Below, one piece after another: positions 1 to 27,816 of a stretch of 64,000 nucleotides of DNA. The position numbers were made by a program, and so were the translations under genes. Origin of the DNA: Macrostomum hystrix (Eukaryota; Animalia; Platyhelminthes); contig CATNEN010000025.1 in assembly GCA_950097015.1 (NCBI GenBank), positions 1,984,001 to 2,048,000 of the forward strand, in the 5' to 3' direction. The notes under the pieces are model-generated. The model was not told the DNA's origin. It worked only from the letters and a program-made list of their open reading frames with translations, and did no database searches. Positions within the stretch are counted from its first letter, which is position 1; each line of letters opens with the position of its first letter.

Positions 1-2129
1 ACCTGCTGGCGGACCGGCCGGAGCGGCTGAGGCTCAGAGTTACCGGGGATCTGGGAGAAAGAAGCGAGAAACTGCTATTTTATAATCGCAGTCTGCAGGT
101 GAGAGCGATGAGCAGAATTAGCAGAGTTGGGGATTAGAAGCAGATTCCTAGAATATAAAAAAGGAATTAGTGAAAGGGGAGAATGGAGAGAAACAAAAAA
201 GGAGAGTGCGGATAAACAGAAGGGAAATGGAGGATTAGCACGAGAGAGAGTTGGGGTTAGCTTCAGGGAGAGTTGGGGTTAGCTTCAGGGAGAGTGGGGA
301 TTAGCTTAAGGCAGAGTGGGAACTTGCAGGAGGGGAGTGTAGTGAATCATCAAATTTAATTCAACAAGTCAGATAACAACAACCTTTACCTCAGGTAGGA
401 AATGCCTGGTCGAAGGCCAAACTGTCCATGCAGATCCGCAGCAGGCAGTTGAGTCTTCATGTGAGCACACAATTTAGCCCAATAAATTGATAATTTGAAT
501 ATGTGCCTCACTCTTATATAGTTTAGAACTTATATTTTCATTCCTCTAAACCGCAGTTTTTTAGAGACAGTTCGAAGCAAGAATCTCGGGAATTTCGTCG
601 CCATTTTTATTTAATCAGCAAACTGGGTGAGCATTGGTATAGTTAGCTGCTGATATACTGTAAGATTTGTCTGATATACTGTGAATGCGATGGTCTTAAA
701 AGCTCGAAAGAGTCGGTTAGAAAAAAGTACAAAAGTGTCGGTGAGATCGAAAACTGAAAAGTGTCGGTAAGATCAAAGACTGAAAAGTGTCGGTGAGATC
801 AAAGACTGAAAAGTGTCGGTGAGATCAAAGACTGAAAAGTGTCGGTGAGATCAAAGACTGAAAAGTGTCGGTGAGATCAAAGACTGAAAAGTGTCGGTGA
901 GATCAAAGACTGAAAAGTGTCGGTGAGATCAAAGACTGAAAAGTGTCGGTGAGATCAAAGACTGAAAAGTGTCGGTTAGATCAAAGACTGAAAAGTGTCG
1001 GTGAGATCAAAGACTGAAAAGTGTCGGTAAGATCAAAGACTGAAAAGTGTCGGTAAGATCAAAGACTAAAAAGTGTCGGTGAGATCAAAGACTGAAAAGT
1101 GTCGGTTAGATACAAGTACAGAAAGTGTCGGTGAGATCAAAGACTGAAAGTGTCGGTGAGATCAAAGACTGAAAAGTATCGGTTAGATAGAAGTACAGAA
1201 AGTGTCGGTGAGATCAAAGACTGAAAAGTGTCGGTTAGATAGAAGTACAGAAAGTGTCGGTGAGAAAAAAAGCCAGAACGTATCAGTGAGATCACAGGCC
1301 AAAACTATAGGTGAGATAAAAGTACAGAATGATTCGGGGGGGATTGATTAAGAATCAACAGTGTCAACGTCAAAATGAAGAAGACGGTATTATTTAACAA
1401 GGAAAAATTATCTGGCATGCTTCATCCCTAGACCGGAGTCTTCAGAATCCAACCCTCTGCAATGCCGCGGAGCCACTCGCAGTCTGTCCAACTGTGATGC
1501 CGCCAACTGCAGCCCAGTTCAACGCTCTCAGGTCATCGATGTCGGCCGTGGCTGTTCAAGCATCAGCAGCTGTGGCAATACGTACCACCGTGTTGCTAGT
1601 CCCGGCGATCGCACTGGCGCTCGTACTCGCGCTCTACCAGACGATAAAAATTCGCCGCCTCGGATGGCCTCCGGCGAGATTCGAGCGACGCTTGATCACC
1701 CTGGTGCTGCCTGCCGATGGCCGACGTCGTAAGTCGGTGTCGCTGCTCCGGCTGCGTCGCCAACTGACCGCAGCTCCGGGTGTTGAAGTCCGCGCTGTTG
1801 TTGGCCTCCGCTGCCTGTCGCGAAGCCTTGCGGGCCAGTCCAGCTTGATCGTGTTCATCAGCTGGGACGCCAGCTTTGCCAGCCTGCGGTTCTCCGACAG
1901 CGGCCTGTCCGTTGAGACGCAAAGAATGCTTAGAACTCTGCTGCTGGCTGAGAAGCATCGGGTGCGGGGATTTTACACCGACCTGAAGGTCGAGAATCCC
2001 GCCGTTGTCATGGACTCAGTGTGGTACAGCCTCAAATCTACGTGGCTAGACGAAGATGAAACTGGTGTGCGACAGTCAGTGCTCCACCTGGTGGATCAGA
2101 TTCGCAATGATGATGCGGCTTGTGAGTGA
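1..2129 (+). CDS. Type I membrane receptor paralogue A with SEFIR/TIR-like cytoplasmic domain (5' partial)
   Basis: Phase-consistent GT-AG exons <1-98, 395-460, 557-626, 1432-2129. Contains LLADRPERLRLRV, a hydrophobic segment (TTVLLVPAIALALVLALY) followed by KIRR, then an alpha/beta tail (LITLVLP...GVEV...LIVFISWD...LRTLLLAEKHRVRGFY) homologous to the gene at 23542-27816. Possible extra terminal exon 2766-2842. The SEFIR/TIR assignment is pattern-based. Confidence 0.75.
741..1310. repeat. 26-bp intronic minisatellite (TGAAAAGTGTCGGTGAGATCAAAGAC)
   Basis: About 20 direct tandem copies in intron 627-1431. Confidence 0.95.
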
Positions 2130-2145
2130 CGAAACCGCGTTCGCT

Positions 2146-2748
2146 AGGGAGATAAGAGGGAGGGTGTGAACAGAACAGAGATAAGAGGGAGGGTGTGAAC
2201 AGAACAGAGATAAGAGCGAGTGTGTGAACAGAACAGAGATAAGAGGGAGGGTGTGAACAGAACAGAGATAAGAGGGAGGGTGTGAACAGAAGAGAGATAA
2301 GAGGGAGTGTGTGAAGAGAACAGAGATAAGAGGGAGTGTGTGAACAGAACAGAGATAAGAGGGAGGGTGTGAACAGAACAGAGATAAGAGGGAGGGTGTG
2401 AAGAGAAGGGAGACGGGAGGGTGTGAAGAGAACAGAGATAAGAGGGAGGGTGTGAACAGAACAGAGACAAGAGGGAGTGTGTGAACAGAACAGAGATAAG
2501 AGGGAGGGTGTGAACAGAACAGAGATAAGAGGGAGGGTGTGAAGAGAAGGGAGACGGGAGGGTGTGAAGAGAAGGGAGATGGGAGGGTGTGAAGAGAAGG
2601 GAGATGGGGGGGTGTGAAGAGAAGGGAGATGGGAGGGTGTGAAGAGAAGGGAGATGGGAGGGTGTGAAGAGAAGGGAGATGGGAGGGTATGAAGAGAAGG
2701 GAGATGGGAGGGTGTGAAGAGAAGGGAGATGGGAGGGTGTGAAGAGAC
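2146..2748. repeat. GA-rich 25-29-bp minisatellite
   Basis: Tandem GTGTGAACAGAACAGAGATAAGAGGGAGG grading into GTGTGAAGAGAAGGGAGATGGGAGG. Confidence 0.93.
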
Positions 2749-3257
2749 TAATCGAAGTCACCTAGGCTCGATGCAACAAATTCCACCGACATTTCAGTGG
2801 AAGTGTAAACTCTTGGAGTGCAAGTCTAAGCTGGTCAAATGAAGGCCAATCAAGGAAGAAATCTATAAATTAATCTCCTTAGCTGCTTAAAGTTCGTTTG
2901 TAAATTTTTGTACAAAAAATCGTAGACTTTCAATTCTCATATAGTTGAACGGCAGAATGTGTTAGTTTATGAATTTACATTTTTAGACTCAAAATTATAG
3001 CTTATACTCATCAATTATGTGCAAGGAATATATATATATTTCTAATCACATTAAACATTATAGCTATTTTCTATATCCATGTTGATTTTTTTCAATTTTT
3101 TCTCTTACCTTTTTACAATAGTACAAATGCTGTATCAAATAAATTTATTTTAAAAGCTTTTTAAAACCTTTCTTGGCAGCAGACACTAAAATGGACCGGA
3201 AGCTTTGATTGTATTTTTGAAAGTTTTTTTGCCTATTTATCATGGGCCCAACGCATT

Positions 3258-5270
3258 TAGGGGTATTTGTGGGGTATTTGTGGTTCATGGGGTATTTCTG
3301 GTTCATGGGGTATTTGTGGTTCATGAAGCTTGGAGTTCAATGGGTATTTGTGGTTCATGAAGCTTGGAGTTCATGGGGTATTTGTGGTTCATGAAGCTTG
3401 GAGTTCATGGGGTATTTGTGGTTCATGAAGCTTGGAGTTCATGGGGTATTTGTGGTTCATGAAGCTTGGAGTTCAATGGGTATTTGTGGTTCATGAAGCT
3501 TGGAGTTCAATGGGTATTTGTGGTTCATGAAGCTTGGAGTTCAATGGGTATTTGTGGTTCATGAAGCTTGGAGTTCATGGGGTATTTGTGGTTCATGAAG
3601 CTTGGAGTTCAATGGGTATTTGTGGTTCATGAAGCTTGGAGTTCAATGGGTATTTGTGGTTCATGAAGCTTGGAGTTCATTGGGTATTTGTGGTTCATGA
3701 AGCTTGGAGTTCAATGGGTATTTGTGGTTCATGAAGCTTGGAGTTCATGGGGTATTTGTGGTTCATGAAGCTTGGAGTTCAATGGGTATTTGTGGTTCAT
3801 GAAGCTTGGAGTTCATGGGGTATTTGTGGTTCATGAAGCTTGGAGTTCAATGGGTATTTGTGGTTCATGAAGCTTGGAGTTCATGGGGTATTTGTGGTTC
3901 ATGAAGCTTGGAGTTCATGGGGTATTTGTGGTTCATGAAGCTTGGAGTTCAATGGGTATTTGTGGTTCATGAAGCTTGGAGTTCATGGGGTATTTGTGGT
4001 TCATGAAGCTTGGAGTTCATGGGGTATTTTTGGTTCATAGGGTATTTATGGTTCATAGGGTATTTATGGTTCATAGGGTATTTATGGTTCATGGGGTATT
4101 TGTGGTTCATGGGGTATTTGTGGTTCATGGGGTATTTATGGTTCATGGGGTATTTGTGGTTCATGGGGTATTTGTGGTTCATGAAGCTTGGAGTTCAATG
4201 GGTATTTGTGGTTCATGAAGCTTGGAGTTCATGGGTATTTGTGGTTCATGAAGCTTGGAGTTCAATGGGTATTTGTGGTTCATGAAGCTTGGAGTTCAAT
4301 GGGTATTTGTGGTTCATGAAGCTTGGAGTTCAATGGGTATTTGTGGTTCATGAAGCTTGGAGTTCATGGGGTATTTGTGGTTCATGAAGCTTGGAGTTCA
4401 ATGGGTATTTGTGGTTCATGAAGCTTGGAGTTCATGGGGTATTTGTGCAGTTCATGAAGCTTGGAGCTCATGGGATATTTGTGCAGTTCATGAAGCTTGG
4501 AGCTCATGGGGTATTTGTGGTTCATGAAGCTTGGAGCTCATGGGGTATTTGTGGTTCATGAAGCTTGGAGCTCATGGGATATTTGTGCAGTTCATGAAGC
4601 TTGGAGCTCATGGGGTATTTGTGGTTCATGAAGCTTGGAGCTCATGGGATATTTGTGCAGTTCATGAAGCTTGGAGCTCATGGGGTATTTGTGGTTCATG
4701 AAGCTTGGAGCTCATGGGGTATTTGTGGTTCATGAAGCTTGGAGCTCATGGGATATTTGTGCAGTTCATGAAGCTTGGAGCTCATGGGGTATTTGTGCAG
4801 TTCATGAAGCTTGGAGCTCATGGGATATTTGTGCAGTTCATGAAGCTTGGAGTTCATGGGGTATTTGTGCAGTTCATGAAGCTTGGAGCTCATGGGGTAT
4901 TTGTGCAGTTCATGAAGCTTGGAGCTCATGGGGTATTTGTGCAGTTCATGAAGCTTGGAGCTCATGGGGTATTTGTGCAGTTCATGAAGCTTGGAGCTCA
5001 TGGGGTATTTGTGCAGTTCATGAAGCTTGGAGCTCATGGGGTATTTGTGCAGTTCATGAAGCTTGGAGCTCATGGGGTATTTGTGCAGTTCATGAAGCTT
5101 GGAGCTCATGGGGTATTTGTGCAGTTCATGAAGCTTGGAGCTCATGGGATATTTGTGCAGTTCATGAAGCTTGGAGCTCATGGGGTATTTGTGCAGTTCA
5201 TGAAGCTTGGAGCTCATGGGGTATTTGTGCAGTTCATGAAGCTTGGAGCTCATGGGATATTTGTGGTTTA
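3258..5270. repeat. 34-36-bp minisatellite (CATGGGGTATTTGTGGTTCATGAAGCTTGGAGTT)
   Basis: About 2 kb tandem array with an internal shorter sub-array near 4020-4170. Confidence 0.96.
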
Positions 5271-6182
5271 TAAAGGGAACCACGCCTGTAAATTTATTTA
5301 GTAGCGCCTGAATGCTAACAGCGTTGGGTGGTGACTGATTGGTTGACAGACTAGGCGATGGTGTCCTGTGGTTGAGCTGCCCCAAATACTTAGGCTTGAT
5401 CTGTGAAATTGGAGAAATTCGCGTCAGGGTGTCCATAGTGGCCTAGTTCCACCTGTTGTAGCCCTTGAAGGTCCAGCAAGTCCGTCTAGATAAAGGTAGG
5501 TGACCACCGAAGACGGAGATGATGCAGGCACATTCGGGTGACATGCTGATCAATTATGAAGGCCTGGCAAGGCCCACTGAGGCGCAGTGCTGATTTGTGT
5601 ATAGGGGTGTATGAAATGCACTTGCGCTTATGGGAAAACTCAGACCTTCGGCCAGACACATTGAATATCTCGACGGTCTGAAGAGCTGACGGCTTGATTC
5701 TTGTTTCAGAAGATGCGCGACAAAAAGTTGGCCCGTGTTTTTAAGCTTCGTGTGCTTGCGTTGCTCCGTTCGGGTGCAGCAAAAAAAAATGTCAAGTGGG
5801 GGGAATTTCCCTCCCTTAGAAATTCTACTGTTAAAGATATGGGCATAAAGCCGAAAAAAGGTTTATCTGTACTTGTCTGCTTACAGTAAATCAGAAGTAG
5901 AATTTCCAGGAAATTGCCATATTCATGCGTACATCATGCTCTGTGCACACATATCAGTTTTCCGTTGATGGACAGTTGAATGTACACTGATGAAGCCGCG
6001 GCTTGTACAGCCACATATGTACGAGCTATTCGCGAACTGTGCGTTTGACAATGAAGAGAGAAAATTCTTGTCTATAAAGTGGGCTCAGCTGGTTCTGCAG
6101 ATTTTAACATAAGAGTAGATATACAAGTTTGTAATACGCATATCTATGAGGCAGGATAACAGTTCTTCAACAACAATAAAGA

Positions 6183-9100
6183 ATGGACACAGATGAACAG
6201 AAGCCAGATGATTCATCTCTTCAGGAGAGGCAGCCGACATCGCCGACGCCGCATCATCATCCGTTGACATCTGCCAGTTCTTATCAACAATCGCTATTTC
6301 ATGCGACTCATATGGCAAATTATCAGCCGTATTGGTGCCTCAATACTGCTTTCCCACCACCTTCGCTGCCGAATTTCGCACCGTCGATGCTCCCGACGAT
6401 GTGGCATTTCATGCCGGTTGCACCTGCAGATCCACTGCCGATGGCCACCATTGCACCGACGCTGCCTTTGCCACCTCGCCGCGACACACTGTCTGAGCAT
6501 TGCTACGGAGGCAGAAGAGAGGCCTCTAAAAGGTCAAAACCTTCGACACTGACTAAACCCATGGAGAGATGCAAGTATTACATGGAGGGCAGATGTAATA
6601 AGGTTGGTTTACCCTTTCATTCCTATAGCATTGGTATCTTGTTGGTACTCGTACCTACAACAGTTAAAAAATAACATGAAAAATCCTGAGGATTGAAAGG
6701 AAAAATTGGTCACACAAAATATAATGACATGATTAGAGAGCATCGACTGTTGAAATGAGATTATATCCCAGTGAGTCTCTAGATCACATTGTGCTTGACA
6801 TGCTTGATAAGGAGGGGTGTAGACGGGCCAGAGGGTAACAGATGAAAACAAGGGGGTATGGAAAGAGAGACAAACATCAGGGACGAGGGAGAGAAAAGTG
6901 AGTGAAGGTTAGCTAGCCAATCAGGGACGAGGGAGAGAAAAGTGAGTGAAGGTTAGCTAGCCAATCAGGGACGAGGGAGAGAAAAGTGAGTGAAGGTTAG
7001 CTAGCCAATCAGGGACGAGGGAGAGAAAAGTGAGTGAAGGTTAGTTAAAGATGTTGAACAGACAAGAGGGAGAGATGAGAAAGTACAGAAGAGGGGAGCA
7101 TAAACAAGACGGAAGGAAAGGAGAAGCCATAACACAATCATTTAACCCCCCAGTCCGACAGCTGCCCATTCAGTCACGACTTTGTGCCGCCACGCAAGAA
7201 GAAGTTGTGCAAGTACTTTGCCCAGTCCCGCTGTCGCAACGGCTCCAAGTGTCCGTACATGCACGGGGACTGGCCGTGCAAATACTACCATCTGAAACAC
7301 AAATGCACCCAGCAGCCAGGACAGTGCCGGTTCTCGCATGAGCCAATCAGCGAAGAGATGGCCAAGCTTTTAAAGGAGACCTACTCGTCCACGGAAAACA
7401 AGGTTTCGGTCGACTAAGATCTAGATGGTCGTGTGGATGTGAATACGCGGGGAATCTGTGGCAGAAGGGGAGAAGGGGAGAGCGACAGAGCTGAGAGAGA
7501 AGAGAGGGGAGAGCGACAGAGCTGAGAGAGAAGAGAGGGGAGAGCGACAGAGCTGAGAGAGAAGAGAGGGGAGAGCGACAGAGCTGAGAGAGAAGAGAGG
7601 GGAGAGCGACAGAGCTGAGAGAGAAGAGAGGGGAGAGCGACAGAGCTGAGAGAGAAGAGAGGGGAGAGCGACAGAGCTGAGAGAGAAGAGAGGGGAGAGC
7701 GACGGAGCTGAGAGAAAGGAGGTAAAATGAGGAAGAGTATGATATGTTAAAAAATCGTTCAAATCTTAAAAGCGACAAAATTGCTAATGTGCTACTTTAA
7801 ATTTATAGCCAGGAGCAACAGAAGCAGAGTTACAGGTACCGCAACAGCCCGCTTGTAAAGAACAAGAAGAAGAAGAAGAAGAAGAAGAAGAAAAAGAAGA
7901 AGTTACAGTCAGATATTACCACCGGCGGACTTTTGACTGCTCAGACTCAAAAGAGTCATACAGTCCATCAGAGGATCCCGCCGCTGGTGCTGCAAACAAG
8001 AAAGCTTTAGCTACCATGGACGAAAAGAAGCTTTTTGGTGAGACACCAACCTCAAATTTAATAATGTACTGGGGATCTCAAAGACTAGGGAACTGGGGAT
8101 CTCAAAGTCTAGGGAACTGGGGATCTCAGAGACTATGGAACTGGGGATCTCAGTGACTAAGGAACTGGGGATCTCAGTGACTAAGGAACTGGGGATCTCA
8201 GTGACTAAGGAACTGGGGATCTCAGAGACTAGGGAACTGGGGATCTCAGAGACTAGGGAACTGAGGATCTCAGAGACTAGGGAACTGGGGATCTCAGAGA
8301 CTAGGGAACTGGGGATCTCAGTGACTAAGGAACTGGGGATCTCAGAGACTAGGGAACTGTGGATCTCAGAGACTAAGGAACTGGGGATCTCAGTGACTAA
8401 GGAACTGGGGATCTCAGAGACTAGGGAACTGGGGATCTCAGAGACTAGGGAACTGGGGATCTCAAAGTCTAGGGAACTGAGGATCTCAGAGACTAGGGAA
8501 CTGGGGATCTCAAAGTCTAGGGAACTGGGGATCTCAGAGACTAGGGAACTGGGGATCTCAGAGACTAGGGAACTGGGGATCTCAGAGACTAGGGAACTGG
8601 GGATCTCAGAGACTAGGGAACTGGGGATCTCAAAGACTAGGGAACTGGGGATCTCAAAGACTAGGGAACTGGGGATCTCAGAGACTAGGGAACTGGGGAT
8701 CTCAGAGACTAGGGAACTGGGGATCTCAAAGACCAAGGACTTAGGGATCTTAATTTTTAGGAACTGGGAATGCCAAAGACCAACACTGAAGATGAACAAG
8801 CAAATGATGCAGTCATAATCACCTGCCATCAGGGGAACAACGGATGAGTGCGTACAGCAACATGTACACCAATCCAGCAAACGCTTCCTACTTCAAAAGC
8901 GATTGTTCTGATGAGAGCGACTCAGCAAGACTGGCCGACGTGGCCGACAGTGTCACTGTCAGGCGTGACAACATTAGAGAACTCGAACCCGATAGCTACA
9001 AAATTGAACAGCCGCGCAACGTCAACGACTGGCGGGACAGGCTGCCTTGCTCAGGGTGAGAACAAATCGAGCACGCCCATAGACGTAGAAAGTTGCATAG

Positions 9101-9384: not shown

Positions 9385-9409
9385 AAAGCGAGAAAAAAGT
9401 AGAGATAAT

Positions 9410-10607: not shown

Positions 10608-13600
10608 TCAGGCCAGTTCTCGATTCTCGACGCAGCGAGAAGCGGCCACAAGCCAGGCAGCTGGGCGCTCCCGCCTTGCTAGCAGATCGGCCAACTGAGG
10701 AGAGGCAGGGTTCAGTAGTTTGGGATTCGGGTTCTGCAGTTCGGGATTCGGGTTTGGCAGTTCGGGATTCGGGTTTGGCAGTTCGGGATTCGGGTTTTGC
10801 AGTTCAGGATTCAGGTTTGGCAGTTTGGGATTCGGGTTTTGCAGTTCGGGATTCGGGTTTGGCAGTTCGGGATTCGGGTTTTGCAGTTCAGGATTCAGGT
10901 TTGGCAGTTTGGGATTCGGGTTTTGCAGTTCGGGATTCGGGTTTGGCAGTTCTAGATTCGGTTTCGCAGTTTGGGATTCGGGTTTGGCAGTTCGGGATTC
11001 GGGTTTTGCAGTTCAGGATTCAGGTTTGGCAGTTTGGGATTCGGGTTTGGCAGTTCTAGATTCGGTTTTGCAGTTTGGGATTCGGGTTTGGCAGTTTAGG
11101 AATCGGGCTTGACAGTTTGGGATTCGGGTTTGGCAGTTTGGGATTCGGGTTTGGCAGTTCTAGATTCGGGTTTTGCAGTTCGGGATTCGGGTTTTGCAGT
11201 TCGGGATTCGGGTTTGGCAGTTCGGGATTCGGGTTTTGCAGTTCAGGATTCAGGTTTGGCAGTTTGGGATTCGGGTTTTGCAGTTCGGGATTCGGGTTTG
11301 GCAGTTCTAGATTCGGTTTTGCAGTTCGGGATTCGGGTTTGGCAGTTCGGGATTCGGGTTTTGCAGTTCAGGATTCAGGTTTGGCAGTTTGGGATTCGGG
11401 TTTTGCAGTTCGGGATTCGGGTTTGGCAGTTCTAGATTCGGTTTTGCAGTTTGGGATTCGGGTTTGGCAGTTTGGGAATCGGGCTTGACAGTTTGGGATT
11501 CGGGTTTGGCAGTTTGGGATTCGGGTTTGGCAGTTCTAGATTCGGGTTTTGCAGTTCGGGATTCGGGTTTGGCAGTTCTAGATTCGTGTTTGGCAGTTCG
11601 GGATTCGGGTTTTGCAGTTCAGGATTCAGGTTTGGCAGTTTGGGATTCGGGTTTTGCATTTCGGGTTTCGGGTTTGGCAGTTCGGGATTCGGGTTTTGCA
11701 GTTCAGGATTCAGGTTTGGCAGTTTGGGATTCGGGTTTGGCAGTTCGGGATTCGGGTTTTGCAGTTCAGGATTCAGGTTTGGCAGTTTGGGATTCGGGTT
11801 TTGCAGTTCGGGATTCGGGTTTGGCAGTTCTAGATTCGGTTTTGCAGTTTGGGATTCGGGTTTGGCAGTTTGGGAATCGGGCTTGACAGTTTGGGATTCG
11901 GGTTTGGCAGTTCTAGATTCGGGTTTGGCAGTTCGGGATTCGGGTTTTGCAGTTCGGGATTCGGGTTCGGCAGTTCTAGATTCGGGTTTGGCAGTTCGGG
12001 ATTCGGGTTTGGCAGTTTGGGAATCGGGCTTGACAGTTTGGGATTCGGGTTGGTGTGCAGAATCAGATAAGTAAACAGAATTGCCTACAGCCAGCTCACC
12101 TGGCCGGATCTGACCACTATGCCGTGGGCGGACAGCAGCTTGGCCTTGGTGGCGGCGATGCCTTGCGGCATGACGCCGCAGCAGGCGTCCTCGAGCAGGG
12201 CGGTGCGGAAGCCCAGCTCCTGCGCGTGGGCAGCCGTGGAGCCCACGCAGACGTCTGTAGCCAGGCCGCACACCACCAGGTCGCAAACGCCCAATTTGCT
12301 CAACCGCTCATGCAGATCAGTTTTTTTGAGCTTATTGTTATCCCAGAAGGCTGAGTAGCTGTCTATGTCCGGATCAGTGCCTTTGTACACCTTCATGTGA
12401 TTGCTCGCCACCTGTTTAACAGTAGAAAGAGCACGATATTTTCAGCCCTATAGAAATACTAACGGGGTGTTTCAAATACCCAATGCCTACTTCACGATAA
12501 CTCCCAAACCGAATGACCAATTTTCGTGAAAGTCCACCATGTGGATCAAAATGTTCCACACTTAACGATGACAAAGTTTTTCAGAGCCATCCGAATTTTG
12601 TGAAATTTTTTGAGCATAAAAAGGTGCCAATATATGTGGTTCTTGCCACCAGAAACTAGAACCCCGTGGTGAATGGTTGGGTTGTGATTTTTTAATGAGA
12701 ACTGAGTACTTTAATGCGAATCTCATCACGCTAGTTACTCACCTTAAGATCCGGATGCAGTTCTGAGCCGTGCGAGTTCTGCACGCAGTGTCGCGGCCAC
12801 ATTATCTGCTCAATCGGGCCGTAAGAACTAGTCTCAAGCACAACTGTATCGTTCAGGCCAACCTTGCTGGCGTCCTTGATCTTGCGATCGTATTAAATGT
12901 ATTAAATGTAATGATTGAATATGGCAACATTCAACACAGCCTGACCCAGTACACAGCCTGACCCAGTACACAACCTGACCCAGTACACAGCCTGACCCAG
13001 TACACAACCTGACCCAGTACACAGCCTGACCCAGTATACAGCCTGACATATTATACAGCCTGACCCAGTACACAGCCTGACCGATTATACAGCCTGACCC
13101 ATTATACAGCCTGACCCAGTACACAACCTGACTCAGTACACAGCCTGACCCAGTACACAACCTGACAATTTTACAGCCTGACCCAATACAGCCAAATTTG
13201 GCCCTTTTTATCAGCTAAATCGGCAGCTAAAAGTGCCAGCAAAGCTCACTTTGGACTTGTCACTCAAACGACGCTTGGCCAAGTTGTCCAAGAAGGAGAT
13301 GTGATCAGTTGGATGCCAGTCGAAAGAATAAACAATGGTTTTAAATTCACCGGCATGCTTCGCGATGACATCATTGATGACTGGAACAACATCGGCGCCG
13401 TCCTCCTTGGCCGGGTAGGCCTTCAAAGCCAGGCTACCCGTTATAAAATCATTTTGCACGTCAACTATAACCATAGCAACCTGGCCAAAGAAGATGGTAT
13501 CCAACCATGGCTGGCCACGGGCTGACATGTCAGACAGGGACACAAGACTGTCCTGGATTATTAGATTATTAAGATTAATTGATTAAATGATTTTGTTTGA

Positions 13601-16738: not shown

Positions 16739-18068
16739 ATGGTCTACAACAAAGCAAAGAAAAGGGCTTCTAATAGACAATATGTAAATAAGAAGATGGC
16801 AGATGATGCTGAAAGCTATCAGAATTATAAAAGGAGAAAGGCTAAGGAATATTATTGGAAAAGAGCTGCAGTCCGTGTTGGAGCCTGTGTTGAAGCACAA
16901 GCTGAGTTTTGTGCTGAAGCTCAAGTTGAAGCTTGTGCTGAATCACCGAATGGAGTTTGTGTTGAAGCACAAGCTGAAGCACGGGCTAATGAAAGAAAGG
17001 ATAGAAAAGGCCTGGTTCGGACTCTAGCTGCTGTGAGGAGAGAATCTGCAAAGAAAGATAAGCGTCATCTCCGTATATTGGCGGATCTAAACACCCTGAA
17101 AACACAGTATAAGACCTTAAAGTCTAAGTATCGCCTGCTGCAGCAAAAGATCAGGCGAAGCAGCTTATCTAATAGACCCAAAACTTCCGATTCCTCTATC
17201 CAGTCAGCAGTTGATGACGAAGCCACCACTCATATCGTCCAAACTATAATTGCCCTAAAGCGAAAGCCTGAGATACAACTTCTCGTGCGCGATATGGTTG
17301 AGACAGCTGGAAACCCCGGCAGCGACGATGAAAGTGCTAAGATGCACGCCTAAGGTTCTTAAGGCAAAGCCACCATGTCAAGACAATCTCAAGCGCAACG
17401 CGGTCATTGGCTTTTTTTGTGATGACGGCAACACACGCTCAACTGCTGGGAAGAAGGAGACTGTAGGGCGAGGCAACCGGAAGAAGCAGAAAAGGATCCT
17501 GCTCTACAGCATGGAGGTTCTTCTGTGGAAGTTCAGAGCAGAAAATCCATCCATTTCCCTAAGCCGTGCCACATTTTACCGTCACCGACCAGCATATGCA
17601 GTGCATCCAACTCTATCCGACCGGCAGCAGTGTCTGTGCTCGAAGTGCGAAAACCTCGACCTTCTAGTCGAGGGTCTCCATTCCGTGAGACTTGTCAGAG
17701 CTAACGACAAGCACGCTCTGCTGCTGGAAATTGTTTGCTCAGTTGGTTCAGCCGCCTGTCTCAGTAATTTGTGCCAGATTTGCCATGAAAAACCCGCGAT
17801 ACTCAGCCAAAACATTGTTGGTATTTCACATGTCACTTATAGCAAATGGGAGCCAAAGGAGGACTCAACCGGCATGGAGATCGTCAGCCGAAATGTCACT
17901 TGCGAAGTAGCCATCAATGAGTTACACAAGCAGCTTCGGGATTATGGCTCCCATTTTATGCGGCTGCGCCACCAGTACCGAGCTATTCGGGATCTGCGGT
18001 CTAGTCTAGGCGAGAATCATTTGGCACTTCATATTGACTTCAGTGAAGCTTATGGAGCTCCGTGTTGA
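16739..18068 (+). mobile_element. Truncated, frameshifted DNA transposase, Sola2-like
   Basis: Two overlapping ORFs (16739-17353, 17298-18068) with FFCDDGNTRSTAGKKETV, KQKRIL, SRATFYRHRP, CLCSKCENL, CxxSxxCLxxxCxxC, HxxHQY and LHIDFSEAY. The ORF stops just after the first catalytic-like Asp. Family call is from remembered motif patterns; termini not found. Confidence 0.7.
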
Positions 18069-18540: not shown

Positions 18541-21470
18541 CAGAGAAGTAGGCCCTATCACTAATTACTAATTACTAATTATATCATATCGCGCGGCAGC
18601 CTTTCAAAACGACTTACAAATTATTTTAAATGGCGACCGCCCACCAATAATTTCATTAATTTCCTTTTTTTTCCTTTTTTCGCTTTAAGCGAAAATTAAA
18701 ACAAAAAACACGAACTCTCGAGCCAGAGTGTAGTCCGTCTCTGACGCCGAACTATGCTTTAAAAATGTACGGCATGAAAAGTTTCGCTAATGATTTGATA
18801 CTGAAGAAACTTTTAATTAAAGTGTGTTCTGGCGGCCTTTTTGGATGCCTCTTTATGATCCTATTTCTGCCTGACCCAAAGGTATGGATCAATTATTTCA
18901 CCAGATACTGCTGCTAGCTACAACTGATTGACGCATGTCCATGCTACACAATGACACCTCAGACACACTAATTAGTCAAGTACTTTTTCAGATATTCTCA
19001 TTTAAAGTGTGCTTTCTCTGCTTCTTTGCGGCTTTCCCCTGGACATGAAAAAATGGACAAATCATGCATGATCTATGGCAAAAAACATGCGTGTTTCATG
19101 ACTCATGTATGATGTATGCATGTTTTTTGAAAACACATGCATAAAGGAATCCATGTAATTTCTCCACATCATATGCATGTATGACCCATGTATTCCCTTT
19201 TCACATGCATATGGCTTATCATTGGTGCTTTGGTACGGTTTATACATTTTCTCCGCGCAGCCTAGCCTGTACGTAGTATAGACGCCAGCGTCTTCTTTTC
19301 GATGAACGTTTCAGCTAGTTCTATACTTAAGCAGTCTTTAAGATGATAATCACAAAATAACAAAGAAATGTTACACTTCGCTCGTCTGAATGACATTTTG
19401 GATTACACAATTGACGTAACAGCTCTGTGGCCGGGATTTAAATCTTCCTTCAAATTTTATTTAGACGTGTATTTTCAAATACGTGTATTTTCAAATACGT
19501 GTATTTTCAAATACGTGTATTTTCAGAGATCGAGAGCGCCAATCAGAGAAAACCAAGCTTATCAGTACTATCAGCTTGCTTTGACAATTCTTGCACAGAA
19601 ATATTTTTCCTAATTAGAACAAAAATAGAAAAATAGTCGTGCAATGTTTAAATTCCTTAGCAACAAATGGCGAATGGCCGGGATTCATTATTCAGTTAGG
19701 ACCAATGAAGAAATAACTATAGTGACTATAAAATTTCTAAAACTACAATTTTATACTGCTATACTTCTATACTACATTTCTACTAATATTTTATACTTCT
19801 ATACTACAAATAGCATACTGGACAACTGGACTTTATGCAACTGGATTTGCTTTTACGAATCATGCCTTACGTACGTGTTCGGTCCTGGCTGCTATAGCTC
19901 GTCGTTTGTTCTCCCGGGCCACTTGGTTCAAGCTGTTTTTAATTGTCGCCCAGACGTCCGGTAGTCGCTCAATCGACAACGTGAAGCACTTCCGAAGAAG
20001 CCCTGTGAACAGATGTATAGGGCATAGCGAAATCACATTTACACTAAGAAATATCAAATCGTGTAGCCATCAACAGCTGCCTTGTTCTGTTTCCTGTTCC
20101 ATGACAGTACATGATTGACGATGATGGAAACAATTAACTGCAAATATTTACTCACGTTGTTGCAACTCCTCTACTTGGGAAGCAGGTGCATGATTGCTGC
20201 CTGTCAGTTCGATTGCCACAACGTGAATCGATAATATATCGCGAAAAATATATATATCGCGAAACTCTGATGTCGGATGCGTAGCTTGACGTTCGCCCCA
20301 GTGATTGACACAAATGTCGATCTGAATCAAATAGGTATGACGAGTCATACCATTGACATTAAACAAATGAGTGGTGTGACCGTATGATCCATGTGACATG
20401 AAATTTTATACGTACGTCTTGACGCATGTCCCACTACACAATGACATAACGCAACAATTTATCATAACGCACTGGTTTTATCTAGTATTCTACTAATACG
20501 TACTGATTTGAGATTCCAGCTGTCATAGTCGGGCTACCAATGGACTAGACTTGCCCAATCAATCACGCAAATCCGAATGACTCCTCCTTAATTGCTTTAA
20601 TTCTAATACAGCTTGGCTATGTCTTGATAGGAAGTGTATGAAATAAGTAAGACGCTTTTAACGCGAGTAAGTAAGACTGTTTAAAACGCGAGTGAGCGCG
20701 GAACTCATGTTGTCTTCATCAATTTTATTCTTGTATTTTTACTATAATTTGGGGTGGCGTACCCCACTAAAACACGGAACTCAGTTTAACAAAATGGAAT
20801 AATAATATTTTTTTGCGCAAATTTGTCTTCTAAAATATTCGGTAATTATACAATGCCTCACTTTAAAGTAACATGGATATTAAAGAAACAAATAAGACGT
20901 AACAACCCATATTGACCATTACTGTAGCTATTGTTTAATAATAACATTTGGTAATAGCTATACATATAAATACGCTCGTATAACGAAACTTTAATCTTTA
21001 AAGATGATATTAAATAAACTACTGCATCGCAAAGAAGCTTCAGGAAGATAGCTGGTAAAAAATAGATTGACGAATATATTCATAGATATAGCTCTTATGA
21101 GCAATGGAGCATTACTATTTAAAATACTATTCTATACTACCTGGCTGTTTTGAAGTTTATATTTCTCATTGTTAAAAAATTTAATTGTTTTCAAGCAAGC
21201 ATTCTAAAAATTTAACAGTTAATATTTAGATGCACAAAAAATTATACGTTTTGACATTAGTCTGATGCGTATGCTTCGGTTTACTAAGAAACGGGGCTCC
21301 TTTTGTGTTAAAACTTCAATATAGTTATCGGGAAATGCCCAGCTCGAGGACCACTATAAGTTTCTAGAAGGACCAATCTTTAGATCTAGTGGTCCAGTGT
21401 AGTGTCAGCTTGTTTGTACTTCTATCTCCCCGTGTTATTATTCACTGCTTATTTTGTATTTTTAGACGCG

Positions 21471-22368
21471 TGTTTTTTTAGCTAAAAGTCACCCACGCCA
21501 AGCCGGGCCGGACCAGCCGGGGGAGCGGACGCCCACCACCCCTCGATCGCTACCCCTGGGCTACAATCCCGGCCAATCAGCGAACGACCCGGCCTGACTA
21601 CCTGTCGACCCTCGGCAAGAAGCTACCCCGGGGCTCAGAACGGCGGTCGCGAGTCTACTGTGATTTGTCGCCTTGGCTCAAGCTATACAGCCAGGCATCC
21701 ACCTCGCCGATCGACCTTATTTGGGGATTTGGGGTTAACATGACTCTATAAAAGGAAGCGTGTTTTAGCAGTGACTTTTTATCGTTCTTCGCGATTCGCC
21801 TCACACTTTGAGAAGCACGTGCAAGCTAGTCCACTTTGTTTTGTCTCGCCCCGCCCGACCACGCTCCGCTTGTTCAGTTAGGTAGCTTTCGGCGCTACGC
21901 GTCTCGAGAGTGCGCCGCTGACAAGGGTGGTCTAGATAGGCGCTTGTTGTCGAAGTCAGTACGGGCTCTCTTCGGAGACTCCGCCGTCAGGCAGAAGGAG
22001 TGCCAACCGATAGGATCTGTCGGGGCAGCGCTGAAAGCAGAGACAACCGGAGCCTCTCGGGAAGAGTAGGGCGCAGATTAGGCCAGTTTAAGTAAAAATT
22101 TTATATCCAATTTCCCCGGACCAAATTTTGCTTTTTACTGTGAGCGCGCTATAATTGCTTTCCGTGCGAATATATCCCACATTCTGTCAGTGTAACTTTT
22201 GAATAAAGTTGAGCAAGTAAAACGAGAGTCAAATCAATTCCTATTCTTATCTGGAGTCGGCGAGTCACAAAACAGACTAAATCACTCCCAATCAAATTAT
22301 TCGAGTCTTCGTGTTCATACTGTGTTGTTCTTTTTTTATTGTGAGTTTCGCCGGGCCGGAGGACGACA
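21471..22368 (+). mobile_element. Probable solo LTR
   Basis: TG...CA bounded non-coding segment of about 900 bp with CCAAT (about 21574), TATAAAAG (about 21748) and AATAAA (22203). Flanks CGCG/CGCT are only an imperfect TSD. Confidence 0.4.
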
Positions 22369-23541
22369 CGCTTATATATTCTCATCGCTTATCTATTCCG
22401 CTTCGCTCGCTACCCCAGTCTCTTAACGCAATTTATTTTCAGATTTCCCCTGCTGCTATTGAACCGATTGGTAGAACACCGACACCGGTGAATGGTGAAT
22501 AGTCGCTAGCTTTATATTCCTCACCCTCCAGCTATTATTACTCGTGCCCCTATGCACAGATAGTTTCCCCAAATTCCTCGCAAATCTCAGAATTGCTAAT
22601 AGTCAGTAACCAGGAAATATTTTTTAAGTAAGACTAATGTTTTTATAGTATACATGAGGAGAAGATATGTTAAGGTTGACAATTGACGTGATCTAATTAG
22701 TTATTTATGCTTTATCTATCGTACAGCGATAAAAAATTTCCGAAGACGAGTCTGGTGCTTGAAATTCCTAGCACCGCGGTGTTCTGCAATGCTCCGCCAA
22801 CTACAGGAGTTCTCTTGCTTTCCCAACATTGGTCTACTTAAAAGAAGACACGTTTGTATGCATGTCTGCGTATGCCTGTATCTATACTGCAGTATCTGCG
22901 GAAAATTTATAACATAAATCGCGAGATGCAAATTCTAAGAATCAATGTTCAAAGTCTGCATGGTGGTAACAAAAGAGAATCTTCGAATTAATTAATCGAT
23001 ACCAGATTGTATTTTTATCGCAAAATGTATCGCTCCTAAGTAGATAACCACAAGCATGTATCTCAATGCTGTTTTAGTTATGAATTAAGAATAAGCTTTC
23101 ATAAGGCCTAGTATTTAGCCTGTGAGCATCAGCTAGCTTTAATTCCGTTTTAACACACTCAGTGCAGTGTTTATTCGCTGTAACATATGCATTTTATATG
23201 GAAAAAATTGATTTGAGGCTTATAGTTACAAACAATGTGACGTTTAAAATAGTTGCGTCATCGGCATGCACTAACAGTGTATAAAGAAATGATATTCTTT
23301 AATGAAGAAATAATGCTTGGAGAATAAAAACTCTACTGCGTTGATGTTGGCTGCAAAATACGTAATTGTTAACAAATGATTACATCTGCTGTGTAATACT
23401 AAGTTTCCGCTAGTGCCAGATCTTGTATATCATTATGCCGTGACTCAATCCTAGATGGATCTGCAATTGAGATGGTGTCATAGATATAATGATTATCAGT
23501 AATGACATGTTGCTAAAACAGTTTACTTTTTAAACTGCTAT

Positions 23542-26500
23542 TTAATAGAGTTTATTAATACCCATATTATCATCTTGCAGGTGCAGCTCCGCCAACAGCC
23601 ATCGAGCTGAACTCTTTATAGACGCCTTACCAACTCCCAGTTGCCTGCTTTTAACACTGGACCAGAATGCAACCGTCGCACTCTCCGTCGCCTGCGGAGC
23701 CCGACCAGCGACGCTTTCGGATTCTAGATAAAATCCTCGAACTCGATGCTTCTCAACCAGAAGCAATGTCCTCAGCAGCTGGTGCTCTTCATCTGGCAAG
23801 CTGCCAATCTGGAATTTCAGATTGCCAAGCTGCCAAATAATGTCTTGAAAAATATCTACTTGTTCACTTGGTTATAAGTTTAGTCAATACAATACTAATA
23901 ATACTAATAATAATTGCAAAAGGGCTGCAGGCAATGGCACATCACATTTGGCGACACTGGACCCGCCGCCAGCGAGTAGGCAATTCTTCCCGTTTCGCTG
24001 ACTCCTAAACACACACACACACACACACACACCCACACACACTCACACACAGATATCGTACGCAGGCACACGCTCACAGGTGTGTGCATCTGCCTTGACT
24101 TTCTCATCGCCAGCTGTAGTCTACTCTCTCACTGTGCCTTGGAGGTTGGCCCTTAAGGGCGTAAATTGCACGACAAGCCCTCAAGCCCTCTCTCCGCGGC
24201 TAATACAATGTGGCCTCGCCGCAGAATCGAGCTCAGGGACGATCGAACGCGTTAGACCGCTCTGCCAGTCACCCCTTTGGTCATACGTACGTCACAGATA
24301 ATTTTCCTCCAAGCCAGTGTGCAAGCGAATGCCTTCTTAGAGTAAATCTATTTAAAGGATAAATTCTCAGTGGAAATGGACTTCAAGTACGATCGTATGT
24401 CTATGGTCCAACATACACTTTCTCAAGCCACATCGAAGGCCCTTAGACCAACAAGAATGTAGGCCTACTTTCTGGCTGTTCCAGGAGTGAACCAGCTCGG
24501 CCAGGGCAGTCCCTAATTCCCAGACTTCCATCTACAGGTGGAAGCTATGCGACCGCTGCCTATGGCTATATGGAAATTATTGATGATGACTTTAAGCTGC
24601 TAGATTATTGGTAGACAAGCCATAAATTACATAAACGATACAATCACCTGAAAGCACTGAAATGTCTCATCCCAGCTGACAAAAATGATATGACGCGAAC
24701 TTCTGACTATCTGCGGCTTGCGCGTAAGACGCCGAAGTTTTACAATTTGGCTGACATCAAAGCCGAATGCCTCCAGCTTGCCTTGAAGTCGCCGTACTGC
24801 CGCTCTTCGACGATAATCGTCTCCTTGATCTGGCAGCACCAGGACAGAGCGCGATCCCGTCCTGATCTTTCGACGTCTTACGACGACGACTAAGAACACA
24901 GATGATAGAAGAGCCAACAGGCAAAGACTCGCAGCAAGCGTCAGGAATGCTGCTGCCAAAATGTTCAACTGACCGGCTGATGCGACATTGTCAGTCGCTG
25001 GACAGCGGCAGGAGTCGTTGCGTGGAAATGTTGGCTGGCAAAGCTGTGGGTACAGCAGCTTCTTCATCGACACGCCTAAAATACGGTTGGCAGCCAATGG
25101 GACTCTTCTTGTAGCTCTGTTGTAGTTATAATTTTCCTTACCATTAATAATAGTTGATTGGCTGAGTATAGTCACGTTTTCGGGAGAGGGAGGAGTTTTT
25201 CTGAATCGGGTTTCCCACAATTTCTAAAAATAGCTACGTGCTATCATGCTTATGCAGTAATAAGTATTTAAGAAAGCAACAATGTCTCACCTTTGCTGCG
25301 TATAGCATGAAATTGACGCCTAGCAGCCAGGATAAACTTACTATCCTTGAAAAACTTGAAAAAATTAAAATTGTTAGTACTAATATGAGTGTCTTCAATT
25401 ATCTGGCTTTTATTGCCACAGAGCAACATATTTTATTTACTTACGTCTACTAGAAGCGTGATGCCTAGTTTGTTTGAAATTTTGACCACTATCGACTGTG
25501 TAGCCCAGACTTCGTTGCTCTAAAAAATTGATGCAATTTTTGAGCAATATTAGAGTGCATTTTAACGCAAAAATAGGTGTCTCCACGCTGTTTAAATTAA
25601 AGCGCATCGATACTTCGCCTTTTCATACATGCCTCAAGCCTCAAAACTGATTGGTACAAACGCCCCTTTACCCACTCCAAATGTACACACGCCTCTGCCT
25701 ACCCCTCAAATGTACACACGCCTCTGCCTACCCCTCAAATGTACACACGCCTCTGCCTACCCCTCAAATGTACACACGCCTCTACCTACCTCTCAAATGT
25801 ACATACGCCTCTGCCTACCCCTCAAATGTACACACGCCTCTGCCCTATCCCTCAAATGTACACACGCCTCTACCTACCTCTCAAATGTACACACGCCTCT
25901 GGCCTATCCCTCAAATGTACACACGCATCTGCCCTATCCCTCAAATGTACACACGCTTCTACCTACCTCTCAAATGTACACACGCCTCTACCCTATCCCT
26001 CAAATGTACACACGCTTCTACCCTATCCCTCAAATGTACACACGCTTCTACCTACCTCTCAAATGTACACACGCCTCTGCCTACCCCTCAAATGTACACA
26101 CACCTCTGCCCTATCCCTCAAATGTACACACGCCTCTACCCTATCCCTCAAATGTACACACGCCTCTACCTACCCCTCAAATTTACACACGCCTCTACCC
26201 TACCCCTCAAATCCACACACCCCTTTACCCAACCCTTCAAAAGTACACACGCCTTTACCCTAACACAATACAAGTTCGCCTTAAATCCATCTAAATTTTC
26301 TAATGTAATTCGAAAATATGTACTCTCTTTCGTGAATCGCAATTATTATATTTTTAGATGTAATTAGATTGGGGGACCACAAGCCGTCTCGGAATCGAGC
26401 TCGGGGACTATGGTGCGAGAATCAGAAGCGTTAACCTGCTAAACCAGTCAAGCCCTTAAAAATCCTAAGTCGAGAAGAAGTATTAATATTTTAGGCTTCA

Positions 26501-27247
26501 CCGTTGAGTTGAAGCCGTGGATGCCATCCGGCCCTCTATCCGGCTCCTGCACTCTGAGCCTCAGCCGCTCCGGCCGGTCCGCCAGCAGGTAGGCGTCCAG
26601 TTCGCAGCCGAAGTCAGCGTCGGGCCGGCCATCACCGCAGCGGCCGCAGCGACGAGCCGCCAGCTGCAGAAGAGGCCGCTCGGCCGCGGTTGATCTGGTG
26701 AAGAAGAATCGAACCTTCGGCGGCTCGCACAGCGCGGAGCCGTTGGCCAGCTTAAAGATCTTCATCGTGTAGGACCTGTCGGGACGGAGACTGACGCTGA
26801 GCCGCAGCCGGCGTCGCTGGCCGTCGGCTGACTGGCTGCAGACGGCCAGCCTGCGGCACTCGTGCCCCGGGCCGAACTCCTCCGCATCGCCTAGCAGGAT
26901 GAGCAGTGTGTCAGCGGGTGTGAGACTGTGCTCAAACTCAAAGTGTCCGGTCAAGTTTGTGGGGCCGGTGGCCGAGAACTCCGTGGCCTGCAGGCTGTCC
27001 GAGACTGCCGCTGCCTGCACCCGGTGGCTGTACAGCGAGGCTGCGGAGACGTGGTTCCGGAAACATATTTAAAATAGGGATATTTGTAATACAAAAGTTA
27101 TTTATGCGCACAATGTACCTTCCATTTCAGGACAGTCAGTTTGATGGATTGAATCCAGAAGACCAGTGTCATTTTTATGCGGAATCTGAATCGGAAAGCA
27201 AAATTTTCAAGTCGAGTATTAATTCTATTACTAAGACAACATGATAG

Positions 27248-27334
<87 letters not shown>

Positions 27335-27816
27335 GGGGGTTCGGTGAGAGAGCGGTTAACGCGTTTGCCTCTCCTACCAATGTCCCTAAGCTCGATTCCG
27401 CGGCGAGGCCACCTTTTTTTAGGGCGAAGCCGCGGAGAGAAGGCTTGGGGGCTTGTCGTGCAATTTACGCCCTTGAGGGCCAACCTAAAAGGCACAAAAG
27501 TGTACTATACAGTATCTGTACCTGCGTACAGTATCTGTGTGCGTGTGTGCTCAGGATTCTGCGAAATGGGCAGAATTGCCTCCTCGCTGGCTGCGGGTCT
27601 AGTGTCACCAAATGATGTGCCATTGCCTGCAGACCTCCTGCAAATATTATTATTACTATTACTTATACAACTACTGCATTCATGCAGTCTTACTGCATAA
27701 GGGCAGGTCGTAGTTTGATTGTTAGTTCCATCGGCAACGCGAAAGCAGACACAGCAGTTGTTGAAGTTGTTCAGCAGCAACATCACCAGCAGCGGAAGGA
27801 ATTTGGCCTGTCCCAT
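23542..27816 (-). CDS. Type I membrane receptor paralogue B with SEFIR/TIR-like cytoplasmic domain (about 523 aa)
   Basis: Exons 27816-27694, 27185-27119, 27040-26502, 25223-24648, 23808-23542. Signal peptide MGQAKFLPLLVMLLL, Cys-containing beta-rich ectodomain, TM LNILAAAFLTLAASLCLLALLSSVFLVVVV-RRRK, tail RSVLVLP...GFDV...IIFVSWD...LRTLLLVEKHRVRGFY. Confidence 0.8.
23891..24275 (-). mobile_element. tRNA-derived SINE family 1, copy 1
   Basis: A-box TGGCAGAGCGG, B-box-like GCTCGATTC, shared body, (ATT)n tail; in receptor B intron 4. Confidence 0.88.
25670..26262. repeat. 29-30-bp minisatellite (CCTCAAATGTACACACGCCTCTGCCTACC)
   Basis: About 20 copies in receptor B intron 3. Confidence 0.94.
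27247..27334. repeat. (CTA)n microsatellite
   Basis: About 29 perfect units abutting the SINE head. Confidence 0.97.
27335..27665 (+). mobile_element. tRNA-derived SINE family 1, copy 2
   Basis: Homologous to the other five copies; in receptor B intron 1. Confidence 0.88.

What the first reader, a model, noticed from the sequence alone, without database searches (positions are those of the whole stretch)
1..27816. Pair of uncharacterised single-pass receptors with a SEFIR/TIR-like tail, arranged tail to tail
Seen: two spliced genes (1-2129 +, 23542-27816 -) share ectodomain YLLADRPERLRLRV, a juxtamembrane PxLC...CP, one TM, and a roughly 150-aa tail with IF(I/V)SWDxxF, LRTLLLxEKHRVRGFY and WxSxKS while otherwise highly diverged. 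Known: IL-17 receptors are type I proteins with FnIII-like ectodomains and a SEFIR domain whose topology (VLxL strand, helix, GxDV strand, helix, IIxV strand) is echoed here. Inference: a lineage-specific innate-immune or signalling receptor family. The strongly conserved RTLLLxEKHRVRGFY block matches no family I recognise.
Basis: partly seen in the sequence, partly recalled or inferred. Interest (0 to 1): 0.8.

Follow-up and report, generated by a model that had tools for sequence, protein, structure and literature searches.

The report
Flatworm-only orphan membrane receptor gene pair

Summary
Their tails are 41% identical with saturated synonymous change (dS about 1.6, dN/dS about 0.35), so they are old paralogues under purifying selection.

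Spliced RNA-like contigs from three runs of one study give a seven-exon gene B with an open 520-codon frame, and they join the TM exon to the tail exon.

The only relatives in 1.84 billion representative proteins are models of one Macrostomum lignano locus (PAA52225.1, "hypothetical protein"), which is syntenic with gene A.

No SEFIR or TIR signal appeared in Pfam, a PDB profile search or PADLOC. An AlphaFold model of the tail (pLDDT 64) shows a beta-alpha-beta-alpha-beta unit followed by three long helices. It matched only generic Rossmann/flavodoxin fragments and helical bundles at noise level.

Between species the tail evolves at least as fast as the ectodomain, unlike classical SEFIR/TIR receptors.

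One extra point: 40 nt encoding YLLADRPERLRLRV are identical in A and B, and RNA contigs break exactly where that identity ends. This suggests gene conversion, or a shared near-identical outer half.

Verdict: a real, lineage-restricted orphan receptor-like family. The immune reading is not supported.

The parts
1..98 (+). Gene A, last part of the large ectodomain exon (cut by the window start). It encodes LLADRPERLRLRV...NRSLQ, with a GT donor at 99-100.
   Evidence: homologous to the end of B exon 3 and to P0001
395..460 (+). Gene A small ectodomain exon (22 codons, phase 0), equivalent to B exon 4. Predicted only.
   Evidence: AG/GT sites and frame; 64% identical to the matching stretch of P0001
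557..626 (+). Gene A small ectodomain exon (70 nt, ends in phase 1), equivalent to B exon 5 (FFRDS.. against FFKDS..). Predicted only.
   Evidence: the phase fits the acceptor at 1430-1431
1432..2129 (+). Gene A last exon: juxtamembrane P.LC...CP, the TM segment, the whole 154-aa cytoplasmic tail and the stop codon. There is no intron in the tail.
   Evidence: tblastn with P0001 E 4e-27
27694..27864 (-). Gene B exon 1: 5' UTR from about 27862/27864, ATG at 27816, signal-peptide-like start, 41 codons.
   Evidence: (contigs reach 27864; joint 27694/27185)
27119..27185 (-).
   Evidence: RNA-like contig joints 27185/27694 and 27040/27119 in X2-X4; frame check
26502..27040 (-). Gene B exon 3: main ectodomain exon of 179 codons with 6 Cys and 3 N-glycosylation sequons. 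It ends ...YLLADRPERLRLRV...NST.
   Evidence: 58-61% identical to P0001
25445..25519 (-).
   Evidence: joints 25519/26502 and 25354/25445 in X2-X4
25291..25354 (-).
   Evidence: joints 25354/25445 and 25075/25291 in X2-X4
24648..25075 (-). Gene B exon 6: juxtamembrane P.LC...CP, the TM segment and the first half of the tail up to IIFVSWDETFQCFQ.
23542..23808 (-). Gene B exon 7: second half of the tail (LRTLLLVEKHRVRGFY, WSSVKS) and the stop codon.
   Evidence: joint 23808/24648 in three runs
26551..26590 (-). 40-nt tract 100% identical to window 1-40 of gene A. This is a likely gene-conversion tract, or the end of a shared near-identical 5' half.
   Evidence: 40/40 identical, while pS is 0.67 elsewhere; contigs of X2 and X4 start exactly at 26551

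Best explanation
A and B are two intact paralogous genes of an orphan family known so far only from Macrostomum flatworms. Each encodes a type I single-pass membrane glycoprotein.

The parts are a signal peptide, a Cys-containing ectodomain of about 300 aa with no recognisable domain, a conserved P.LC....CP stalk, one TM helix, and a cytoplasmic domain of about 150 aa. The cytoplasmic domain is predicted, at low confidence, as a small beta-alpha-beta-alpha-beta unit followed by a three-helix bundle.

The likeliest working mode is inferred, not shown. It would be a surface receptor or recognition protein whose ectodomain binds an unknown ligand and whose non-catalytic tail docks cytoplasmic partners. 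No catalytic or known signalling motif was found.

The pair arose by an old inverted duplication. Part of the ectodomain coding sequence has since been homogenised by gene conversion, so the two proteins probably present the same or nearly the same outer part on diverged stalk, TM and tail.

The tail is not demonstrably a SEFIR or TIR domain.
For: Genes are real and B is expressed:
- Spliced contigs with GT-AG introns occur in three runs, and the frame is open for 520 codons.
- dN/dS is about 0.35 between A and B and 0.4-0.5 against M. lignano.

Type I topology:
- There is a hydrophobic N-terminus and one TM segment.
- All six N-x-S/T sequons of B lie N-terminal to the TM.
- A basic cluster follows the TM.

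Family range:
- The exhaustive profile search finds one representative, M. lignano PAA52225.1.
- Word and profile searches find only models of that locus.
- The M. lignano locus is syntenic with A: a CCCH gene lies downstream and there is an intronic minisatellite.

Tail model:
- pLDDT 64, with strands at residues 9-15, 40-47 and 61-64 and helices at 83-106, 112-128 and 132-153.
- The N-terminal half resembles receiver, flavodoxin or Rossmann fragments only weakly.

Gene conversion:
- 40 of 40 nt are identical against pS 0.67 elsewhere.
- Contigs of X2 and X4 start exactly at 26551 and run unbroken to 27864. Their depth (13.6 and 11.5) is higher than that of B-specific contigs (7-9.8).
Against: - No ligand, partner, tissue or phenotype is known, so the receptor function rests on architecture alone.
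- The tail model has low confidence, and the ectodomain was not folded.
- Gene A's splicing and expression were not observed directly.
- A's 5' part lies outside the window, so the shared outer half is an inference from how the contigs break.
- Between species the tail changes at least as fast as the ectodomain (dN 0.55 against 0.35). That is unusual for a receptor with a conserved signalling module and fits a less constrained scaffold or a non-signalling protein.
Confidence: 0.6

Rival explanations
1. The tail is an extremely divergent member of the STIR (SEFIR/TIR) superfamily, and the proteins are IL-17-receptor-like or Toll-like innate immune receptors of flatworms.
For: - The order of elements in the first 65 tail residues echoes betaA-alphaA-betaB-alphaB-betaC of TIR/SEFIR: a hydrophobic strand LVLP, a basic helix, a G(V/F)(E/D)V strand, a short helix, then strand (I/V)(I/V)F(I/V)SWD.
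- The nearest shapes for that half are flavodoxin-like or receiver-like fragments.
- RVRGFY could be a fourth strand that AlphaFold mis-modelled as helix.
Against: - No SEFIR or TIR hit at E<=10 in Pfam, the PDB profile search or PADLOC.
- No TIR or SEFIR chain among the listed Foldseek (top 50 rows), VIA (top 50) or Atlas (10 rows) matches.
- The TIR box 1/2/3 motifs are absent from the alignment.
- The second half of the tail is modelled as all helical in both runs.
- The tail is not the conserved part of the protein.
Confidence: 0.12
2. The proteins are non-signalling, fast-evolving surface proteins specific to the lineage, for example in adhesion, the secretory pathway or reproduction. The tail would be only a sorting or anchoring region.
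For: - The family is restricted to Macrostomum.
- Divergence between species is high, with dN/dS 0.4-0.5 over the whole length.
- There is no known signalling motif, and the YxxL in A's tail is not conserved.
Against: A tail of about 150 aa with predicted regular secondary structure and conserved blocks, kept in paralogues with saturated dS, is more than a sorting signal needs.
Confidence: 0.25
3. One or both loci are pseudogenes or chance ORFs.
For: Gene A is incomplete in the window and was not seen directly in RNA.
Against: - All visible exons are open, with canonical splice sites and matching phases.
- There is purifying selection.
- B is present as spliced contigs in three runs.
- The contig break at 26551 suggests that A transcripts are present too.
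Confidence: 0.03

Closest known systems
Macrostomum lignano hypothetical protein BOX15_Mlig029866g3 (PAA52225.1 / A0A267DSM1, 458 aa). A0A1I8H6B0 is a longer model of the same locus.
   Same: - Same architecture and exon layout as gene A: a large ectodomain exon, two small exons, and a last exon carrying stalk, TM and tail.
- 58-61% identical to B's main ectodomain exon and 40-45% to A's tail.
- Same downstream CCCH gene and the same intronic minisatellite.
   Different: - It lacks the exact YLLADRPERLRLRV and EKHRVRGFY blocks.
- It is present as two 99%-identical tandem copies.
- It is uncharacterised, and the name 'Cadherin domain-containing' on the long model has no Pfam support.
IL-17 receptors / SEFIR domain proteins (Pfam PF08357; general description in PMC4517768)
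   Same: A type I single-pass protein with a globular cytoplasmic domain of about 150 aa directly after the TM. The beginning of the tail has alternating strand and helix.
   Different: No sequence or profile match. There is no detectable FnIII domain. The predicted tail has three strands plus a helical bundle. The tail is less conserved than the ectodomain.
TIR domain receptors (Pfam PF01582, PF13676)
   Same: A similar strand-helix alternation. The hhFhSWDxxF strand loosely recalls the hydrophobic strand plus Ser/aromatic motif of TIR domains (my recollection, not a test).
   Different: - Box 1 (F/Y)DAFISY, box 2 RDxxPG and box 3 FW are absent.
- There is no HMM hit in Pfam or in PADLOC's TIR models.
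- There is no structural match.
Paired receptors with a shared ectodomain and different tails (vertebrate KIR/LILR-type pairs; a similar pair was noted elsewhere in this genome, s1-306099)
   Same: Two linked paralogues whose outer coding part appears homogenised while stalk, TM and tail are diverged.
   Different: Both tails are homologous and keep the same motifs, so there is no activating/inhibitory split. The shared outer half is inferred, not seen.

Membership tests
SEFIR domain (PF08357) / IL-17 receptor family | Significant match to the SEFIR profile | tested here: not met
   hmmscan of A tail, B exons 6 and 7, P0001 and the P0001 tail at E<=10 gave no SEFIR hit. The profile search against PDB sequences gave none.
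SEFIR domain (PF08357) / IL-17 receptor family | Three-layer alpha/beta/alpha fold with a 4-5-strand parallel sheet | tested here: inconclusive
   The AF2 tail model (pLDDT 64, pTM 0.40) has three strands and then three long helices. No SEFIR chain appears in the Foldseek, VIA or Atlas lists. The model is too weak to exclude the fold.
SEFIR domain (PF08357) / IL-17 receptor family | FnIII-like extracellular domains | tested here: inconclusive
   Pfam finds no fn3 or IL17R domain in B exon 3 or P0001.
TIR domain (PF01582 / PF13676) | Significant match to a TIR profile | tested here: not met
   No TIR hit in Pfam at E<=10 or in the PADLOC TIR-containing models.
TIR domain (PF01582 / PF13676) | Box 1, box 2 (BB loop) and box 3 motifs | tested here: not met
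   The alignment of the three tails shows LVLPxxG, G(V/F)(E/D)V and F(I/V/L)SWD instead. The motif definitions come from my own knowledge.
TIR domain (PF01582 / PF13676) | Five-strand flavodoxin-like fold | tested here: inconclusive
Macrostomum Mlig029866-type orphan family | Significant full-length similarity and the same domain order | tested here: met
   E 7e-31 with the tail profile. tblastn gives E 4e-54 for the ectodomain exon and 4e-27 for the tail.
Type I single-pass membrane glycoprotein | N-terminal signal sequence, one TM, sequons only on the N-terminal side, basic residues after the TM | tested here: met
   Hydropathy and sequon scan of each exon. No dedicated signal-peptide predictor was available.

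The most novel reading that the evidence does not exclude
The cytoplasmic domain is a previously unseen signalling or docking fold. A and B would then be a concerted-evolution pair: gene conversion keeps the ligand-binding outer half identical while stalk, TM and tail diverge. That would make them a flatworm-specific counterpart of paired receptors, built from entirely unknown parts.
Probability: 0.2. Interest if true: 0.55.

Novelty: new variant of a known kind. Interest (0 to 1): 0.3.

Why it matters
Flatworms lack many canonical innate-immune receptors, so a well-supported new receptor family would be a useful entry point. What is shown here is more modest. It is an expressed gene family, restricted to Macrostomum, of type I membrane proteins with two domains that match nothing known, plus a sharp gene-conversion boundary inside the ectodomain. 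Its value is as a defined target for RNAi or in situ work in M. lignano (Mlig029866) and for structure determination. It is not evidence for IL-17- or Toll-like signalling in flatworms.

Tried and rejected
- **Pfam DUF6611 hit** on B exon 6 (E 0.034, 14.7 bits against a cut-off of 27) lies over the TM and juxtamembrane stretch. I treated it as chance.
- **Pfam C1_2** on P0001 (E 0.26) and the **PDB hits** uL2 (E 1.5) and Cdc48 N-domain (E 0.79) are chance.
- **ESM-Atlas feature search** of the A tail ORF gave only unnamed eukaryotic clusters at 0.78-0.82. For the tail alone there was no usable named hit.
- **First AF2 run**, with TM plus tail, gave pLDDT 49 and was not used for fold search.
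- **Word search with A's tail ORF** found nothing. This is expected, because the length filter excludes the 458-aa relative.
- **The 'Cadherin domain-containing' name** of A0A1I8H6B0 has no Pfam support. Its first 250 residues or so look like a fused upstream model.
- **Further family copies** were sought in the window and in the M. lignano locus with an HMM over six-frame ORFs. Only A, B and the two M. lignano copies turned up.
- **Rfam** found nothing in 1-28000.
- **Paper searches** for the M. lignano gene id and for SEFIR plus flatworm gave nothing relevant.
- **A promoter/terminator scan** was irrelevant to a eukaryote.
- **Earlier-findings look-ups** by sequence and by words were blank.
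Full report
**1. Observation**

- Gene A (+): window 3-41 encodes LLADRPERLRLRV. One open frame from about 1432 to 2129 encodes the P.LC....CP stalk, one TM segment and a 154-aa tail with IVFISWDASF, LRTLLLAEKHRVRGFY and WYSLKS.
- Gene B (-): the same elements lie on three of the larger ORFs, at 27020-26448, 25220-24627 and 23799-23542.
- A and B tails align at 41% identity over 188 codons. pS is 0.67 (dS about 1.6, saturated) and dN is 0.58. They are therefore old duplicates under purifying selection, not a chance resemblance.

**2. Gene models and expression**

One sequencing-run search and one read-laying run were allowed. Runs X2-X4 (one study, coded organism B) are spliced, RNA-like contig sets. 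Their joints, all GT..AG on the minus strand, define gene B as seven exons:
- 27864/27816(ATG)-27694
- 27185-27119
- 27040-26502
- 25519-25445
- 25354-25291
- 25075-24648
- 23808-23542

I translated the exons one by one with the carried phase. The frame stays open for 520 codons up to the stop.

The joint 23808/24648 links the TM exon to the tail exon in all three runs.

For gene A I placed two small exons (395-460 and 557-626) and the acceptor at 1430-1431. This rests on similarity to B and to the M. lignano protein, and on matching phases. These A exons are predictions and were not seen in RNA.

Topology: there is a hydrophobic N-terminus and one TM segment. All six sequons of B lie N-terminal to the TM, and a basic cluster follows it. 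This gives a type I membrane glycoprotein.

The two genes are convergent but about 21 kb apart. Between them lie a CCCH-type ORF, an isochorismatase-like exon and transposon-like ORFs.

**3. Relatives**

- Pfam, PDB sequences and the word-index search with A's tail gave nothing.
- The exhaustive HMM search with a tail profile (A plus B exons 6 and 7, kept as separate rows) against 1.84 billion representatives returned a single protein, P0001, at E 7e-31.
- P0001 is Macrostomum lignano PAA52225.1, "hypothetical protein".
- Word searches with P0001, and with a profile of P0001 plus all window exons, found only models or fragments of the same M. lignano gene: P0002 and P0003.
- The M. lignano locus (L001) holds two 99%-identical tandem copies followed by a CCCH zinc-finger gene. 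Gene A in the window is also followed by a CCCH ORF, and the big intron of both carries a related minisatellite.
- P0001 is therefore A's counterpart.
- Exon nucleotide identity is about 72% and dS is 0.8-1.2. The window thus comes from another Macrostomum-like species, or from an old paralogous region, and not from that M. lignano assembly.
- In public protein data the family is so far confined to Macrostomum.

**4. Is the tail SEFIR/TIR-like?**

Sequence tests all gave nothing:
- No SEFIR, TIR or TIR_2 hit at E<=10 in Pfam, for any exon or for P0001.
- No hit in a profile search of PDB sequences.
- No hit in PADLOC, which holds many TIR models.
- No usable hit in the Atlas feature search.

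Structure:
- The tail alone, with a four-row alignment (three distinct proteins), gave pLDDT 64 and pTM 0.40.
- The model has strands at residues 9-15, 40-47 and 61-64 with short helices between them, then long helices at 83-106, 112-128 and 132-153.
- Foldseek against the PDB had no match at E<=1e-3, and the top rows were Rossmann-type enzymes at TM 0.25.
- The Atlas shape search gave flavodoxin, DapB_N and receiver fragments at TM by query of 0.42 or less.
- No TIR or SEFIR entry appears in any of the listed matches.

So the first half may be a small Rossmann- or flavodoxin-like beta-alpha-beta-alpha-beta unit. The whole tail does not resemble TIR or SEFIR. The model is too weak to close the question, so membership is not met by sequence and is inconclusive by fold.

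- The "strongly conserved" blocks are changed in M. lignano, to YLRSGWVGGLLLKL and EKHRMLGAF.
- Between species the tail changes at least as fast as the main ectodomain exon. The tail has dN 0.55 and 44% identity. The ectodomain exon has dN 0.35 and 58% identity. In classical TIR/SEFIR receptors the signalling domain is the conserved part (my knowledge).

**5. The 40-nt identity**

Window 1-40 is 40/40 identical to 26590-26551, and the identity stops right after the RLRLRV codons. Elsewhere two thirds of synonymous sites differ.

After that point A resembles P0001 (TGxLGxxS) and B does not. The tract therefore looks like gene conversion between A and B.

In runs X2 and X4 a 728-nt contig starts exactly at 26551 and runs unbroken through exons 3, 2 and 1 to 27864. 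Its depth (13.6 and 11.5) is higher than that of B-specific contigs (7-9.8). In X3 one contig runs straight through at the same depth.

In a k-mer graph such a break is what a branch produces. The lack of a second break at 26590 implies that the other transcript, presumably A, stays identical further upstream.

I infer, but could not show, that A's unseen 5' half is nearly identical to B's. The pair would then present the same outer part on diverged stalk, TM and tail.

**6. Mechanism and rivals**

- Best reading (0.6): an orphan, Macrostomum-restricted family of type I receptor-like surface proteins, with a non-catalytic docking tail of unknown fold.
- Very divergent STIR-type immune receptor: 0.12.
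- Non-signalling, fast-evolving surface protein: 0.25.
- Pseudogene or artefact: 0.03.

**7. Limits**

- The full-length proteins of A and B were therefore not searched or folded, and that step is referred.
- The ectodomain was not folded.
- A's expression was not tested directly.
- The run names are coded, so species and tissue are unknown.
- The scan had not noted this family before.

Noticed in passing
window 707-1322; L001 8521-8899 and 12101-12479: The 26-nt-unit minisatellite in gene A's large intron has a related array (about 67% identity) in the equivalent intron of both M. lignano copies. The array has therefore kept its intron position despite dS of about 1 between the loci.
   Followed up: partly
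window 27341-27660, 23897-24240, 43625-43739, 44205-44521, 56121-56356, 57456-57580: An interspersed repeat of about 310 nt has at least six copies in the window. Two inverted copies sit in gene B's introns. Depth in the RNA-like contig sets is in the thousands (up to about 11,600 per bin), with many loose ends, so it is a very abundant and probably transcribed element. It has no Rfam match.
   Followed up: partly
L001 6705-9760 and 9962-13166: The M. lignano relative is present as two 99%-identical tandem copies with a period of about 3.3-3.6 kb. Copy 1 reads on past copy 2's stop into a longer C-terminus. This could be a real recent duplication or an assembly artefact.
   Followed up: partly
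window 27862-27864 (-): Contigs of X2 and X4 end at 27864, next to a good acceptor (..cacccgtag|g). The X3 contig carries 69 further letters that do not continue colinearly. This suggests a 5' UTR exon or a trans-spliced leader.
   Followed up: no
window 6183-7363 (+); L001 17015-23169: A CCCH zinc-finger gene lies downstream of gene A and is syntenic with M. lignano (window 7151-7363 is 72% identical to L001 22328-22540).
   Followed up: partly
window 48625-49236 (-): A 203-aa ORF with a clear signal-peptide-like start and several Cys. It has no Pfam hit and is not related to the A/B family by HMM.
   Followed up: partly
whole window: The window is extremely rich in minisatellites: 34 TRF rows of score 200 or more, with units of 10-189 nt. 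These create many long spurious ORFs.
   Followed up: no
window 16739-18068 (+); 13211-13543 (-); 46900-47092 (+); 61967-62920 (+): Other coding pieces: transposon-like ORFs without Pfam hits, an isochorismatase/nicotinamidase-like exon, an endonuclease III-like exon (judged by eye) and a 2OG-Fe(II) oxygenase ORF (Pfam E 5e-10).
   Followed up: partly
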